Assembly: GCA_000320545.1 (NCBI GenBank) | Contig: ADNK01001596.1 | Location: forward strand, 65,633 to 129,632 | Direction: 5' to 3' | DNA length: 64,000 bases | Origin: Bigelowiella natans CCMP2755 | Taxonomy: Eukaryota > Protista > Cercozoa | Part shown: positions 15,521 to 21,234 of the stretch, one piece after another | Numbering within the stretch: position 1 is the stretch's first letter | Layout: each line of letters begins with the position of its first letter | Made by a program: the position numbers and the translations under genes | The notes under the pieces: generated by a model | The model's input: only the letters and a program-made list of their open reading frames with translations | Told to the model about the DNA's origin: nothing | Database searches by the model: none

Positions 15521-16759
15521 ATGGTGAAAAATATGAACCAGGAATATCTACTAACACCTCACCCTACTGAACAACAACACAGCCAACAACCTGCTGCAGG
15601 TGTAGTTCGCAGGATCGTAATACCAGCGAGTGACTGCTGGTATATTTATTCAAGAAATGGCCTGTATTTTTGGAAGCAATAGCATGTACAGGGCTGGAAA
15701 TTCCAAAGAACGCCCTGCGCTTCTCTGACTACCTCCAAAATCGGGCCGAATACGGTGAAGATGGATCCGAGCACCGCATCGAATTGCGTGATTTGCTGTG
15801 CCCAATCATCCGATCCAGAGTACCACGTGCACTGTCGGTGTTGCCGACATATTCCTCGCCGCTATTTCTGGCACGAATTGGCTTCCGGATGCTGTTTCAG
15901 AAGGCGAATCCCCTCTCTTGGCTCTGTTCCACCTAGCCTGCAGCAACAAGTGAATGGGGTGATCGTGCCTCTTCCAACAACAAGCAGAATTCAACAGCAT
16001 CCTGGCCAGCGCTGCTAGTCTTCCCCCGTCGCAATGATCATTCGAATCCCTAGCGGCCATGACCTGTTGCGTTCCTCGAGCACGTCCGAATCACCGATGA
16101 TCGGGCGCACCGATACTCCCACATCATTCATCGATGGGGGAATACCTAATGTAAACCCCTTCTTCAGCGGGCGAGACATTCATCCTAGGTTTCGAAGGTA
16201 CAGTAAGAACTATGAAGTTCCCGAATTACTGGATGGATGGAACCCGTCATTTGCTTCCCTATGTGATGCCGGGGAGTCCCATTCAACAACGGCGATGATG
16301 GAGCAGGAGGACAACAAGGACTTCGACATGGACGCAATATCACCGACATTGGATAGCATACGCCAAGCTTCAAACAACTCAGAAAAACTGGCAACAAAGA
16401 ATGTGAACATGAAGCTGGAGGAACAGGATCTAAATAATGAACAGGAATGGATGCACGGAGAGAATGAAAACGGGCTGGTAATAAATGAAGCTAAAAGGCA
16501 GAAAAGAAGAACTTACCGGATTGCTGCATGTGGGCATGAAAATAATATTGGTCGGAAAACCTGCTGGTATCCTGGCTGTGGAGCGAAAATTAAGCCTAGC
16601 ATGACAATGGCAGCAATGGCGAAACGAGAATGGAGACGTCGCAAAAAGATGAAAGACAGGGGCTTCTTCACGGGTTCAAAAATGTCAAAAAACAAGAACT
16701 ATACAAGGGATGAAGCAGAGTTGCTTGCTCATTGCAAAAGAGTATATCGTTTACTTTAA
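15521..16759 (+). CDS. Hypothetical protein with Cys/His clusters (possible Zn-binding)
   Basis: Three same-frame ORFs (15485, 15755, 16034) joinable by short GT..TAG introns. Motifs 'CVICC..EYHVHCRCC' and 'ACGHENNIGRKTCWYPGCG', plus a basic NLS-like 'KREWRRRKKMK'. Start uncertain. Confidence 0.55.
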
Positions 16760-16897: not shown

Positions 16898-17355
16898 ATG
16901 ATTCAAATCGCTTATTTTATGTACAGAACTATTTTATAAATTAATTTATGATATTAGGGAAACGAATACGCTTTACTAGTTTATTAATGTTGTACTAAAT
17001 ATTATCGCACGCGCCTATCAATACTAGAATACATCGCAAGTCGCTGCTGCAATACCAATGCAGCTCTAGAGCTGATCATGTAGGCTGTCACCTACCTGCC
17101 TAATTTACATGGATGCATGCATCCATGATCGAGACATGGCGCGGGGCACAAGCAAAGGCCACGAGCATCGATCGGAGAGATGTGATTACAAACATCATGC
17201 AATGAACTTTTCGACATTGCTTGGTACACTATCCTAGGTACACGAATCGCGCTAGAGCCTAGATAGCTGCGCCGCGTCGCACCACTCTAGCTGACTGCTA
17301 CTGACTGCTTCTTGCATAGTCTAGATAGGCAATAGCTAGTTGTCGGCAGCGTTTA

Positions 17356-17399
17356 CGTTGAAAAGATTTAATCACTTCATTAGATCTACATCCGTCTCA
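17356..17399 (-). repeat. Copy of dispersed ~47-bp TGAGACGGATGTA... intergenic element (diverged)
   Basis: Reverse complement tgagacggatgtagatctaatgaagtgattaaatcttttcaacg resembles the copies at 21551, 21908, 26749 and 32176. Confidence 0.7.
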
Positions 17400-17667
17400 T
17401 GCATGCATGGATATAGTCCGTGCGCTCATGCTTCATGCTCATAGAAGTACGTACGTGAGCAGCTACAAATACGCACAGAGAATACTAACGCACAATTACA
17501 GCACTGTCCTTGCGGATCCTCCAAGCCAAAGCTTTAATTTCTCTACGGCTAAAATTTGAACTAGACTCCATAAACGCCAAACTAATTGGCGCCAATATCA
17601 TTGAACCCAATGACGTTAATTTCCCACACATAATTAATTTAAAGACATTCATTCAAATATCTGTTCA

Positions 17668-18580
17668 TCATCCATTCTCCATACAAGCACTAGACTCCCT
17701 GGTCTTGTTCTTCAAGCAAAGACCAGCGAGAACGTAAAGGGATGCTAATGTGGGCTCAGATTCATTCCTCAACATTTGATACGATTTCCCATTGAATCCG
17801 TCGAGTGAACCAAATGTTTTCAGCAGGATTTGCGACGTGCTGTTCTCGATGCCAATGCCCTTTTCGAGCATAAGGGAGTGCAAATCTTTCCCAACGTCTA
17901 TTTTCTGTCGCATTAATAAGCGACGAAGGATTATATTGTATGTCTCCGAAGAGGCTTGGAGTTTCCACTGATCCATGCGATTTAATACATCGACAGCATT
18001 CTCGAGTCGATTGGCGTTCACATAGGCCAGAAGAATGTCCATGTACATACACTGAGAAAGACATCGTTTCAGATATAAATCTTACTGTTATTTATTAGGA
18101 ACCGGTGGTTCAGATTCCAATAAACGAAAAGGAGGTAATATTGATGAATCGTGTGTATCTTTTTCAACCAATGGGTAGATTTTTCTACTTTCTCTCTCAT
18201 ACGATTAGAGAAGATGAGGGTAGTCATTATTTATCATTATTACTCTTGGTGATAGTAGCAGTGGGGTGATATGAATGGTGCCCTACCAGTGAAGGTTTCA
18301 GGTTTTGTTCGTGCAGCCGCATTAGGACACGTTCTGCCCCTTCGAAGTCGACCAACGACATGTTTCTTAATGGAAATTTCCATGAAGCAACCATTGGCAT
18401 CCGCAGGTAGCTTTTGATGAGAACGACGTAGTGCAGCCTTTTTGGATGCTGCAATCTCGAGAATCTTTCTTGCATCAAGGAGCAGTTTTGCCCCCTCCTC
18501 AGCATTTCCTTGAGTAGTGTTTCCCAGTCTTCATCCCTCAATTTGTTTGGATCTTCGTCCGCCCTGATAGTTGGTCGCAG

Positions 18581-18617
<37 letters not shown>

Positions 18618-18961
18618 GGATGTTTCAAGGTAAAACACTCCCTCGATGATAGCTAACAGCACAACATCACAAGAACTACTCACAGTGATTCTGCAACATA
18701 GTGCTTTCTGTATTCAATTCTGATGGAGCCCAGCCGCGGTATTCTTCTCATGAGACTGTAATCGTTCCTCCAGCTGTGCCGATTCCATATGCTGATCGTC
18801 GGGGATTTCTTCTTCATTGCCAGCGACACCCCAGTAATCTGATATCGTAGTAGGTCAATTGGATTGTGAGTAGATGCAAGTGTATTTTGTCGCGAGGAGG
18901 ATGCGGTTTTGCCTTTACTATCTGATAACTTGGTAAGAACTCCACGCACACACGACTCTCT

Positions 18962-19026
<65 letters not shown>

Positions 19027-20087
19027 CCTCTCTCTCTTATCTCTTTCGCACTCAAAATTACCTCAGATGCGCACAAGCTCTCATTCTTCAGTAGGGTACC
19101 ATTTGTACACGTAAATACGATATCTTTCCAGCCCTCAGCAAGATTTGCGGTATTAATACTTCGCAGCCGCCAACGTCCGCCGCGACAATTTGAACGATCC
19201 TCCCAGCATGGGGCTATGCCTTTACGCATGAGGAACCTGAAGTACAAGTTGCTGCTGTCTCAGACACTTAGACGGCTTTATTGAAATAGAGAACAAATTG
19301 CAACCAGAAGCCGTCGCCCTTGGTGAAGTTTATTCTATGGAATGTGTTGATGATATCTTGTCTTGAGCGTGCCTCCTCGAGCTTCTCATAGCTCCCTAAA
19401 TCCCACCTAATATTTGACGGTGAGAGGTTAATCGATGGTTACATAATAATCATAATAATCAGGTAATTATGTACCACATCGAGATTCATTCCACCCACAT
19501 CATGATCACTTTCATAATCAATGAAATTCATGAAATTCTGCCGTTTCGGGGCCAAATCGTAGGTTGTGCTGATTAATACCCTGCCACCCCCCACCACAAC
19601 GAACCTGTTTGATGTCGCCGAATGATACCACCACACCCAGGTGTATCTGAAGCGACTTCTGTCTCTCTCTCTATGGCGCGAGCTAATCCTGGCCATTGGG
19701 CATCGAGAAGACGAAGTTCGAGGTTGCTTGTCGAGCTGAGTTGCATCATTGGCGGCCATTAGCAATGGAAAAAGCGGTAATGGGGCCCAGTAAAAAGCTG
19801 ACAGAAACAAACTTGCGTTGTGCAGTATGGGAAGATAAAAGTCGAAGCCCCACCCAAAAATCAAAATCTATGCTTATATTGTTCCATTCGCTTACGTGGC
19901 GAGTGGGATTGTTGTCTTTGCCTCTTCGTGCTTCTTTCTTAACGGTAGAGGAAAGTAGACGTGACTCCCCCCTCCCACACAGGACCAGAGCGAGAAGAAT
20001 TGTCGTTAGACACATAGCTATAACCGTCCACTTACGACGACAGATTTTCCTCGGCCTGGGCCCATAGCAAGGGGCGGAATAAATCAT
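17668..20087 (-). CDS. eIF4E-fold + pentatricopeptide-repeat fusion protein with signal/transit-like leader (7 exons, 471 aa model)
   Basis: Exons 20087-19896, 19735-19605, 19406-19305, 19236-19062, 18838-18684, 18563-18287 and 18051-17668 are all GT-AG, in frame and total 1416 nt. eIF4E motifs 'YTWVWW', 'FLMRKGIAPCWED..N..GGRW', 'ITGVSL', 'ISIWNR', 'EYRKH'; PPR-like 'ETYNIILRRLLMRQKIDVGKDLHSLMLEKGI'. Confidence 0.78.
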
Positions 20088-20544
20088 CCGGAAACGAGGA
20101 GGGGGTTAGTGCTTCGTCATGATCCTTTCTTCGTTTCGATTTTGGCCACTCTTCTGTCTGATAAGAGCAAACCCACAACACTTGAAACACGCAATATTGA
20201 ATTTAGGCCTAATAATAAGCGGAAAATACCTAAACCTCTCTTTCCAGAGTTGAATTTGTTTGAGAGAATGAGTACGTAACATCCAAGCAACATCCAACCC
20301 CTGGCACTAATTTGCTCCGGTTTAACCTACCAGAAGCTTTCTTTCTGAACTGGGTAAAAATCGATGTCGTTCTATATAAATCTCCTATATTTATATAAGT
20401 TTTGTCCGTCGCTGCAGCGCAACAGAGCTCAGGAAGAAAGGGCTTTCTGTGAGGCAGCGAGATTGAGGAGGTTCCATTTTCCTGGGTCTTGGATTTCGTT
20501 ACGTATTGCTAAATTCTAACCCTTTATTGATTGAATAGGCTCAA

Positions 20545-20616: not shown

Positions 20617-20667
<51 letters not shown>

Positions 20668-21234
20668 GGTGGGTGCGTTATGTTCTCGTACAAAATCATA
20701 AAGAAACTATTGGAACACGTACCAAGTAAAATTTGTCTTTAACAGGAAGGGAAAGACTACGAAGCTTCTCGATCATATGCTCAATCATCTTCATCACACT
20801 TCATGAACCAGCAGAGTATGGAACTCGATGCCTCTCAGTTAAAACTTGGCAAGGAATTTCATGAAGCACATTGCTTATGGAATGCAGAGGTAGCTGTGAT
20901 TCTGGATACTGTGATTAAAAGAGAAACGCTAAGTGATAGGAATAAAGACTTGGTAAAGACGACATTAGACTATGTAAATAAGTTCAAGTATTTCCCCACG
21001 AAAGAAATGGCTAAGAAGGCAAGGGAGTATGTTGAAGATAATACTAAGCCCGATAGGAAAGGAGGTAAACCAGGTATTGACATCGAACAATTTGAAGTCG
21101 CTGAAATGGCGAACACAGGAATATTCCAGGCTGAGGAAGCCAGAGAACTTCTGCCAACCGTAAAGGAAAAATTTGAGGGTAGAGAGGATGAACTTGAAGA
21201 TTTCCTTTCCGGTCTCACAGAATATGTGGGTTGA
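20545..21234 (+). CDS. RPB4: RNA polymerase II subunit RPB4 (2 exons)
   Basis: 'ELDASQLKLGKEFHEAHCLWNAEVAVIL', 'KTTLDYVNKF', 'FEVAEMAN..AEEARELLP'. Exon 1 20545-20574, exon 2 20746-21234. Confidence 0.92.

What the first reader, a model, noticed from the sequence alone, without database searches (positions are those of the whole stretch)
17668..20087. Organelle-targeted-looking eIF4E-PPR fusion: a 5'-end reader joined to a sequence-specific RNA binder
Seen: a seven-exon in-frame model with a hydrophobic signal ('WTVIAMCLTTILLALVLCG'), an Arg/Ser-rich transit-like stretch, a complete eIF4E-like fold and about 3-4 PPR-like repeats. The cap-pocket 'WED' and 'ISIW' motifs are kept, but the dorsal (S/T)VxxFW eIF4G/4E-BP-binding motif is replaced by 'SRQDII'. 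Established: eIF4E acts on capped cytosolic mRNA, PPRs act mainly on organellar RNA, and signal+transit leaders target secondary plastids or the periplastid compartment. Inference: a repurposed factor that binds or protects defined RNA 5' ends in the plastid, or regulates capped nucleomorph mRNAs, without recruiting eIF4G. I know of no described protein with this architecture.
Basis: partly seen in the sequence, partly recalled or inferred. Interest (0 to 1): 0.86.

Follow-up and report, generated by a model that had tools for sequence, protein, structure and literature searches.

The report
Leader-bearing eIF4E–PPR fusion gene in Bigelowiella
The alga Bigelowiella natans really does express one spliced mRNA for a 471-residue protein that joins a hydrophobic N-terminal leader, a cap-binding eIF4E domain lacking its usual eIF4G docking site, and a short PPR repeat array. 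The reference annotation misses this architecture and I found it described in no paper, but where the protein goes and what it does are untested.

Summary
The seven-exon minus-strand model (ATG 20087, stop 17668-17670) has all six GT..AG junctions in transcript contigs from three independent studies. It also stands in three JGI transcript contigs and in an MMETSP ORF of exactly 471 aa (P0034).

On the contiguous natural ORF, Pfam gives IF4E (62.9 bits, profile 2-132 of 158) plus PPR_2, PPR_3 and PPR_long. Seven of the eight conserved eIF4E tryptophans and the cap-contacting Glu and Arg are kept. The dorsal TVEDFW-type eIF4G/4E-BP site reads SRQDII.

The tail has about five PPR-like hairpins, but none carries a canonical RNA-code residue pair. 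The leader's hydrophobic core matches that of RbcS from the same genome. Its 20-residue basic n-region and its charged post-signal stretch are not typical of a stromal transit peptide.

The organism is Bigelowiella natans. The official JGI model (Bigna1 62536) holds only the last 200 aa, so the fusion is hidden in the reference annotation. B. longifila has an ortholog of the PPR part (83% identity). No fusion was found in any other organism, nor any paper describing one.

My best reading is an eIF4G-independent, RNA-tethered cap binder, most plausibly imported into the periplastidial compartment to act on nucleomorph mRNAs. Localisation and binding are inferred, not shown.

The parts
17353..20133 (-). 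Whole transcription unit (mRNA 5' end about 20130-20133, 3' end about 17353-17361)
   Evidence: Ends of the independent transcript contigs L016, L017, L018 and the X3 contig agree.
20106..20120 (-). Four-codon upstream ORF in the 5' UTR, in frame with the main ORF and closed by TAA 19 nt before its ATG
   Evidence: Read from the sequence. It lies inside the transcript contigs.
19896..20087 (-). Exon 1 coding part, residues 1-64: basic n-region (1-19/20), hydrophobic core (20-38, nt 19974-20030), start of the charged Ser/Arg-rich linker. The second ATG (Met25) is at 20013-20015.
   Evidence: The splice to exon 2 is shown. No paralog exists in the genome.
19605..19735 (-). Exon 2: rest of the Arg/Ser-rich linker and the first eIF4E strand, carrying the Trp equivalents of human W43 and W46 (residues 97 and 100)
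19305..19406 (-). Exon 3: W109 (equivalent to W56, nt 19403-19405) and the rewritten dorsal helix. SRQDII at nt 19349-19366 replaces the TVEDFW-type eIF4G/4E-BP site (V69 to R123, W73 to I127).
19062..19236 (-). Exon 4: eIF4E core with W153-E154 (W102-E103), R163-W164 (R112-W113) and W178 (W130)
   Evidence: Pfam IF4E on this exon alone scores 38.4 bits.
18684..18838 (-). Exon 5: end of the eIF4E core with K209, K211 and T214 (R157, K159, K162) and W218 (W166). The last strand ends near residue 250.
18287..18563 (-). Exon 6: helical linker, one degenerate hairpin, and a PPR repeat with a 15-residue insertion between its two helices
   Evidence: This exon has no Pfam hit on its own. A low-confidence AF2 model shows four long helices. 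Its last helix is part of the PPR_3 and PPR_long matches when read across the junction.
17668..18051 (-). Exon 7 including the stop codon: two canonical-length PPR repeats, one degenerate repeat and a terminal helix
   Evidence: PPR_2 at 3.7e-11. In-register alignment to designer PPR proteins and to PPR10. 83% identity to B. longifila P0023, which ends at the same C-terminal residues.
19736..19895 (-). Intron 1 (160 nt), retained in some transcripts. Its last 24 nt hold an ATG in frame with exon 2, which would give a leaderless 415-aa ORF.
   Evidence: Retained in L016, L017 and an X1 contig.
18956..19037 (.). (CT)41 microsatellite inside intron 4. A (GT)16 repeat lies at 18583-18615 inside intron 5.

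Best explanation
What is shown. This is a genuine, expressed nuclear gene of Bigelowiella natans encoding a 471-residue modular protein. Each module sits in its own exon block. Exon 1 holds a hydrophobic N-terminal leader. Exons 2-5 hold a complete but divergent class-I-like eIF4E domain. Exons 6-7 hold about five PPR-type helical hairpins.

What is inferred. The eIF4E pocket still clamps an m7G cap, because both stacking Trp, the Glu, the Arg and the methyl-contacting Trp are kept. The dorsal surface can no longer bind eIF4G or 4E-BP-type partners. The covalently attached PPR array takes the place of those partners, contacting the body of the same RNA or a protein. The result is an eIF4F-independent, RNA-tethered cap binder. 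It would either shield or repress chosen capped mRNAs, as 4EHP does when tethered by an RNA-binding adaptor, or act as a minimal initiation adaptor.

The leader most plausibly takes the protein into the secretory route and on to the periplastidial compartment. That compartment is the endosymbiont's remnant cytosol, where nucleomorph mRNAs are translated on 80S ribosomes. The host would thereby gain a handle on nucleomorph gene expression.
For: One mRNA and the exact model.

eIF4E identity and completeness: Pfam 62.9 bits over profile positions 2-132; solved eIF4E structures at E = 6e-9; predicted-fold match TM 0.84 over residues 81-250.

Cap residues kept and dorsal site lost: alignments. The closest paralog in the genome (L006) still has TVETFW, so the loss is specific to this copy.

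PPR identity.

Module boundaries coincide with introns 1 and 5.

Constraint: the B. longifila ortholog is 83% identical through to the shared C-terminus.

Leader: its hydrophobic core has the same 19-residue Kyte-Doolittle mean (2.29) as the RbcS signal of this genome. The +6 N-flank predicts, by the positive-inside rule, that the C-terminal body is translocated (inference).

Context from papers: the chlorarachniophyte periplastidial compartment has 80S ribosomes and an active nucleomorph (PMC3101018). Proteins bound for it need a signal peptide (PMC6411479). A gene named mce is listed in a chlorarachniophyte nucleomorph (PMC4494063); that the name stands for mRNA capping enzyme is my own knowledge. 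The cryptophyte nucleomorph's own eIF4E likewise lacks V69 and W73, and no eIF4G is encoded there (PMC3388326).
Against: There are no localisation or binding data of any kind.

The n-region is 20 residues with six K/R. That is atypical for a cleaved signal peptide and compatible with a signal anchor or a mitochondrial signal.

The post-signal stretch is unlike the one stromal transit peptide I could compare. The rule that acidic residues mark periplastid targeting rests only on my memory of Hirakawa et al. 2010, which I could not read.

The PPR code positions are non-canonical, so specific RNA binding is unproven.

Intron-1-retaining transcripts and the internal ATGs (Met25, Met78) could yield forms without the leader.

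Conservation of the eIF4E part and of the leader outside B. natans could not be shown. Whether the B. natans nucleomorph encodes its own eIF4E could not be checked, because the nucleomorph genome appears not to be part of the assembly.
Confidence: 0.4

Rival explanations
1. It acts in the host cytosol as a mRNA-selective translational repressor of the 4EHP type. The protein is either held on a membrane by its hydrophobic segment or made without the leader from Met78 or from intron-1-retaining transcripts. It binds the caps of host nuclear mRNAs picked out by the PPR tail and blocks eIF4F assembly.
For: The cap pocket is kept and the eIF4G site is lost. 4EHP structures are among the best solved matches. 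The closest paralog, L006, appears to lack a leader. Intron-1-retaining transcripts carrying a leaderless 415-aa ORF recur in two JGI samples and in X1. The uORF and a pyrimidine at -3 of ATG1 could favour downstream starts (inference).
Against: The fully spliced form dominates in X3 and X16, which show no intron-1 signal. In that form ATG1 is the first in-frame start after a stop codon. The +6 N-flank argues against a topology with the body facing the cytosol. In the retaining isoform the leaderless ORF lies behind ATG1 and overlaps its 113-codon frame, so it would be translated poorly.
Confidence: 0.25
2. It is an organellar (mitochondrial or plastid stromal) PPR protein whose eIF4E-derived domain has been repurposed. 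That domain would hold non-m7G 5' ends, such as triphosphate or NAD-type caps, of organellar transcripts.
For: PPR proteins work mainly in organelles (established knowledge). The N-terminus has six K/R and no acidic residue before a hydrophobic segment, which resembles a bipartite mitochondrial sorting signal. The best natural PPR matches are plastid and mitochondrial proteins.
Against: The m7G-specific residues (two stacking Trp, Glu, and the Trp that contacts the methyl group) are all retained, which is unexpected if m7G were no longer the ligand. The post-signal stretch contains six acidic residues, unlike the RbcS transit peptide. The first 13 residues hold three Pro and a Gly, which is poor material for an amphipathic presequence.
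Confidence: 0.15
3. It is a young, lineage-restricted chimeric gene with little or no function. On this view the exon-shuffled fusion is transcribed but not under meaningful selection.
For: No ortholog was found outside the genus Bigelowiella. The N-terminal third of the eIF4E domain and exon 6 are highly divergent. Intron retention is frequent. Other first-stage notes report many PPR fusions in this genome.
Against: The PPR part is 83% identical in B. longifila and keeps the same end. Every cap-contact residue is kept while the dorsal site alone has changed. The gene is expressed in at least six studies. The reading frame stays open across seven exons.
Confidence: 0.1

Closest known systems
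Canonical class I eIF4E (human eIF4E-1, PF01652)
   Same: It has the same fold and length of core. Equivalents of W43, W46, W56, W102, E103, R112, W113, W130 and W166 are present.
   Different: V69 and W73 of the eIF4G/4E-BP site are Arg and Ile, and K162 is Thr. It also carries an N-terminal hydrophobic leader and a 220-residue PPR tail. No other eIF4E seen in my searches has such additions.
4EHP / eIF4E2 tethered to specific mRNAs by RNA-binding adaptors
   Same: It is a cap binder that does not recruit eIF4G and acts on selected mRNAs through an RNA-binding partner. This is the logic I propose, with the partner fused in cis. 4EHP structures are among the best solved matches.
   Different: Class II eIF4Es replace W43 and W56 by Tyr or Phe (Joshi et al. 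2005, PMC1260017, abstract plus my own knowledge), whereas this protein keeps Trp at both. Here the adaptor is covalently attached. Any repressor activity is only inferred.
Human eIF4E-LRPPRC-4ESE RNA export complex
   Same: An eIF4E and a PPR protein work on one RNA, with eIF4E on the cap and the PPR on an internal element (PMC5435865). The fusion is a 'Rosetta stone' style counterpart of that pairing.
   Different: LRPPRC docks on the dorsal W73 surface, which is destroyed here. LRPPRC has more than 30 repeats against about five here. Sequence similarity to LRPPRC is marginal (E = 0.0026). No nuclear export role is implied.
Nucleomorph-encoded eIF4E of the cryptophyte Guillardia theta
   Same: It is an eIF4E serving, or proposed to serve, a periplastidial translation system that lacks eIF4G. 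It also has non-aromatic residues at the V69 and W73 positions (PMC3388326).
   Different: That protein is compact, nucleomorph-encoded, without leader or PPR, and comes from an independent (red algal) endosymbiosis.
Engineered PPR-eIF4G and PPR-eIF4E fusions
   Same: A laboratory PPR array fused to an initiation factor steers translation of chosen mRNAs (PMC10762265).
   Different: Those constructs are artificial, carry 18 canonical repeats, and work with eIF4G. The PPR-eIF4E version gave no significant effect in that study.

Membership tests
eIF4E (Pfam PF01652) | Profile match above the curated cut-off over most of the domain | tested here: met
   62.9 bits against a cut-off of 28.7, profile positions 2-132 of 158, on the contiguous ORF L017:375-1619. 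Exon 4 alone scores 38.4 bits.
eIF4E (Pfam PF01652) | Cap-sandwiching Trp pair (W56, W102) with E103, plus W166 and R112 | tested here: met
   Alignments to solved eIF4Es and to a family HMM place W109, W153, E154, R163 and W218 at these positions.
eIF4E (Pfam PF01652) | Dorsal eIF4G/4E-BP binding motif (S/T)VxxFW with V69 and W73 | tested here: not met
   The motif reads SRQDII, so V69 is Arg and W73 is Ile. Paralog L006 keeps TVETFW.
eIF4E (Pfam PF01652) | eIF4E three-dimensional fold | tested here: met
   In the ESM Atlas's own model of P0034, residues 81-250 align to an IF4E cluster at TM 0.84, normalised by the target, over 167 residues. Both sides are predicted models only.
eIF4E (Pfam PF01652) | Binding of m7GTP or capped RNA | not testable with these tools
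   Needs biochemistry.
Pentatricopeptide repeat proteins (PF13041, PF01535, PF13812) | Profile matches above cut-off and tandem 35-residue helical hairpins in register | tested here: met
   PPR_2 scores 43.4 and 38.2 bits against a cut-off of 30. PPR_3 and PPR_long pass their cut-offs on P0023. There is in-register alignment to designer PPR proteins and to PPR10. AF2 models show paired helices but at low confidence, pLDDT 51.
Pentatricopeptide repeat proteins (PF13041, PF01535, PF13812) | Canonical RNA-code residues (position 5 = N/T/S with position 35 = D/N/S) | tested here: not met
   The register gives V/S, M/S and N/E for the three best repeats. No nucleotide can be read from them.
Bipartite plastid/periplastid leader of chlorarachniophytes (signal peptide plus transit-peptide-like region) | N-terminal hydrophobic core comparable to that of a known plastid protein of the same genome | tested here: met
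   The 19-residue Kyte-Doolittle mean is 2.29 for both this protein and RbcS in L011.
Bipartite plastid/periplastid leader of chlorarachniophytes (signal peptide plus transit-peptide-like region) | Short n-region before the hydrophobic core | tested here: not met
   The n-region is 20 residues with six K/R, against four residues in RbcS. It would be met only if translation starts at Met25.
Bipartite plastid/periplastid leader of chlorarachniophytes (signal peptide plus transit-peptide-like region) | Transit-peptide-like region that is Ser/Thr-rich, net positive and poor in acidic residues | tested here: inconclusive
   The 54-residue stretch has 12 S/T and 17 K/R but also 6 D/E. RbcS has no acidic residue in its first 35. 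No conserved first residue is known for chlorarachniophytes (PMC6105332). No predictor was available.
Bipartite plastid/periplastid leader of chlorarachniophytes (signal peptide plus transit-peptide-like region) | Demonstrated import into the plastid complex | not testable with these tools
   Needs a GFP fusion, for instance in Amorphochlora amoebiformis as used in PMC4641359.

The most novel reading that the evidence does not exclude
A host-nucleus-encoded cap-binding protein is imported into the periplastidial compartment. There, lacking any eIF4G contact, it uses its fused PPR array to select or license nucleomorph mRNAs for translation. That would be a host-controlled, eIF4F-independent initiation or repression device for a relict endosymbiont nucleus, and the first natural eIF4E-PPR 'Rosetta stone' for the eIF4E-LRPPRC partnership.
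Probability: 0.3. Interest if true: 0.82.

Novelty: new variant of a known kind. Interest (0 to 1): 0.62.

Why it matters
How the tiny nucleomorph expression system is run and controlled by the host is an open question, and its initiation machinery looks incomplete. A host-encoded cap binder with a targeting-type leader and its own RNA-binding tail is a concrete, testable candidate for that control.

Independently of location, it is a natural case of an eIF4E cut off from eIF4G and joined directly to an RNA-binding solenoid. This is a design that engineers have tried to build, and one that mirrors the human eIF4E-LRPPRC pairing.

It also shows that the reference annotation of B. natans hides domain fusions. 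The catalogued model here is a 200-residue fragment.

Tried and rejected
Exon-wise searches. Exons 1, 2, 3 and 6 gave no Pfam hit. Against solved structures, exons 2 and 3 gave only insignificant chance hits and exon 5 only spurious WD40-repeat hits. Their eIF4E nature became clear only from collinear weak HMM hits, from short matches to paralog L006, and finally from public contiguous transcript ORFs found by look-up.

Homolog hunts.
- phmmer with exon 4 against 1.84 billion representatives gave only ordinary 70-255-aa eIF4Es and spurious bacterial Ig-repeat proteins. The missing self-hit there is not informative, because proteins of the window's own genome are withheld.
- Exons 6 and 7 found only the B. 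longifila fragment P0023.
- Exon 1 found only the window's own read-through ORF P0030.
- Two metagenome scans and one viral scan found nothing. A viral origin for the eIF4E domain is therefore not supported.
A full-length search of other chlorarachniophytes was therefore not done.

Its two jobs were then spent on P0023 and exon 6, both giving pLDDT about 51, before a full-length reference existed. I did not run fold search on those weak models. Complex prediction, meant to test whether the PPR tail docks on the eIF4E domain, was not available. The Atlas was busy for exon 6.

Targeting and context.
- I looked for a periplastid-targeted eIF1 to use as a leader control and found only a leaderless eIF1 and a DENR-like gene.
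- Only one eIF6 locus exists, so the nucleomorph genome appears absent from the assembly. Whether it encodes an eIF4E could not be tested.
- The papers of Gilson 2006 and Hirakawa 2009 and 2010 are not held, and no supplementary tables were available.

Full report
**What is there**

The region 17353-20133 is a minus-strand gene of an intron-rich eukaryote. Reading it gives seven exons with GT..AG introns:
- 20087-19896
- 19735-19605
- 19406-19305
- 19236-19062
- 18838-18684
- 18563-18287
- 18051-17668

Together these make 1416 coding bases, or 471 codons. An in-frame TAA lies at 20108-20106 upstream of the ATG. A four-codon uORF occupies 20120-20106.

**How the spliced model was handled**

Later the tools returned natural contiguous references for the same mRNA and protein (loci L016-L018, proteins P0032-P0034). 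I used these by reference.

**Transcript evidence**

The look-up of sequencing runs listed 20 runs from six studies holding about half of the words of the 3-kb stretch, as expected for a spliced mRNA. Four runs were laid on 17300-20500:
- All six joints appear at exactly the predicted positions.
- Contigs of 1775 nt (X3) and 1739 nt (X16) carry all seven exons with no intron.
- X1 shows the same joints and, in addition, pieces that retain introns 1 and 3.
- Raw RNA-seq reads (X23) cover the 3' end.

An exact look-up of the small ORF P0030 led to three JGI transcript contigs. They map at 99.4-100% identity to the same exon blocks and share ends at 20130-20133 and 17353-17361. L018 is fully spliced, L017 retains intron 1, and L016 retains introns 1 and 3.

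The 90%-identity cluster of these products holds P0034. P0034 is an MMETSP ORF of 471 aa marked complete, and it is identical to the model.

The same cluster holds P0035, the official JGI model Bigna1 62536. P0035 is only the last 200 residues. This fixes the organism as Bigelowiella natans. It also shows that the reference annotation misses the leader and the eIF4E domain.

Its first two refutation criteria (separate transcripts; exon 1 not spliced to exon 2) are not met, so the finding stands on those points.

**The eIF4E domain**

Exon by exon, only exon 4 passes Pfam on its own (IF4E, 38.4 bits). Exon 5 follows collinearly but weakly. Exons 2 and 3 are individually insignificant.

On the contiguous natural ORF the evidence is clear:
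- IF4E scores 62.9 bits over profile positions 2-132 of 158.
- Solved eIF4E structures match at up to E = 6e-9 across the core.
- The ESM Atlas's own model of P0034 aligns at residues 81-250 to an IF4E cluster at TM 0.84.

The alignments map residues onto the human protein as follows (human numbering is from my own knowledge of that sequence):

| This protein | Human eIF4E-1 |
|---|---|
| W97, W100 | W43, W46 |
| W109 | W56 |
| W153-E154 | W102-E103 |
| R163-W164 | R112-W113 |
| W178 | W130 |
| K209 | R157 |
| K211 | K159 |
| T214 | K162 |
| W218 | W166 |

Only the dorsal site differs. TVEDFW becomes SRQDII, so V69 is Arg and W73 is Ile. The closest paralog in the genome (L006) shares the FLMR and WDL-SY motifs but keeps TVETFW and appears to lack a leader. 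The loss is therefore specific to this copy. The genome has at least four further eIF4E-like loci.

**The PPR tail**

- Exon 7 gives PPR_2 at 3.7e-11.
- The B. longifila fragment P0023 reads straight across the exon 6/7 junction and passes PPR_2, PPR_3 and PPR_long.
- P0023 aligns in register with designer PPR proteins and with maize PPR10.

Counting helices gives about five hairpins: one degenerate, one with a 15-residue insertion, two canonical and one degenerate, followed by a terminal helix. This count rests on low-confidence AF2 models and on the register.

The code positions 5/35 read V/S, M/S and N/E. No RNA target can be read from these, and canonical sequence-specific recognition is not supported.

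The B. natans and B. longifila tails are 83% identical and end at the same residues.

**The leader**

Residues 20-38 form a hydrophobic core whose 19-residue hydropathy mean (2.29) equals that of the RbcS signal in this genome. Two features depart from the RbcS pattern:
- The n-region is 20 residues long with six K/R, against four residues in RbcS.
- The next 54 residues hold 17 K/R, 6 D/E and 12 S/T. The RbcS transit peptide is Ala/Ser/Thr-rich with no acidic residue in its first 35.

The positive-inside rule predicts translocation of the body (inference). A stromal destination looks unlikely.

A periplastidial destination fits the biology. That compartment has 80S ribosomes and an active nucleomorph (PMC3101018). 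Entry requires a signal peptide (PMC6411479). A gene named mce is listed in a chlorarachniophyte nucleomorph (PMC4494063). The cryptophyte nucleomorph's eIF4E also lacks V69 and W73, and no eIF4G is encoded there (PMC3388326). None of this has been shown for the present protein.

Met25 has a purine at -3 and would give a textbook short signal. Met78, or the in-frame ATG at the end of the retained intron 1, would give leaderless forms.

**Distribution and literature**

- The gene is single-copy.
- Outside Bigelowiella I found no fused relative.
- No paper in the library describes an eIF4E-PPR protein.

The nearest concepts in the literature are these:
- Human eIF4E-LRPPRC-4ESE complex (PMC5435865).
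- Tethered 4EHP repression.
- Laboratory PPR-eIF4G and PPR-eIF4E fusions (PMC10762265).

Other first-stage notes of this scan report many PPR fusions in this genome, and a protein with a 4E-BP-like motif. I did not test those.

**Verdict**

The functional reading remains inference, and I put it at about 0.4. That reading is an eIF4G-independent, RNA-tethered cap binder, most plausibly sent to the periplastidial compartment.

The rivals are a cytosolic 4EHP-like repressor (0.25), an organellar 5'-end binder (0.15) and a near-neutral chimera (0.1).

I rate it a new variant of known kinds, with interest 0.62.

Noticed in passing
window 17668-20087, compared with JGI model Bigna1 62536 (P0035): The catalogued JGI/EukProt protein for this locus is a 200-aa fragment starting at an internal Met of exon 6. 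The reference annotation therefore lacks the leader and the eIF4E domain, while MMETSP and JGI transcript data hold the full 471-aa ORF.
   Followed up: yes
window 19736-19895 and 19237-19304: Introns 1 (160 nt) and 3 (68 nt) are retained in a sizeable share of transcripts in some samples (X1, L016, L017) but not in others (X3, X16, L018). Retention of intron 1 ends the leader frame after 113 codons. It also exposes an in-frame ATG that would give a leaderless 415-aa protein.
   Followed up: partly
window 20106-20120: A four-codon uORF starts about 13 nt from the mapped 5' end and stops 19 nt before the main ATG. The main ATG has C at -3, whereas Met25 has G at -3. Leaky scanning or reinitiation could shift the start.
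   Followed up: no
L006 (G000:C1447:133375-136449): This is the closest eIF4E paralog of the fusion's cap-binding domain. It shares the FLMR and WDL-SY motifs, keeps the canonical TVETFW dorsal site, and ends in an RGG-rich tail. It has no leader and no PPR.
   Followed up: partly
L004 (G000:C3191:12638-15853), minus strand: This is another divergent eIF4E-like gene. About 0.9 kb upstream of its WED exon lies an ORF that begins with Met and a 13-residue hydrophobic stretch. If it belongs to that gene, it could be a second leader-bearing eIF4E. There is no transcript evidence.
   Followed up: no
window 17353-17386: Transcript contigs of this gene and of the convergent plus-strand neighbour (ORF 16034-16759 and beyond) all break or abut within about 30 bases here.
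   Followed up: no
window 20803-21234 (+): An RPB4-like ORF (RNA polymerase II subunit, recognised by eye and not tested) lies head to head with this gene. The shared upstream region is about 670 bp and contains a (TC)19 repeat at 20620-20658.
   Followed up: no
window 18583-18615 and 18956-19037: Perfect (GT)16 and long (CT)41 microsatellites sit inside introns 5 and 4 of the gene.
   Followed up: yes
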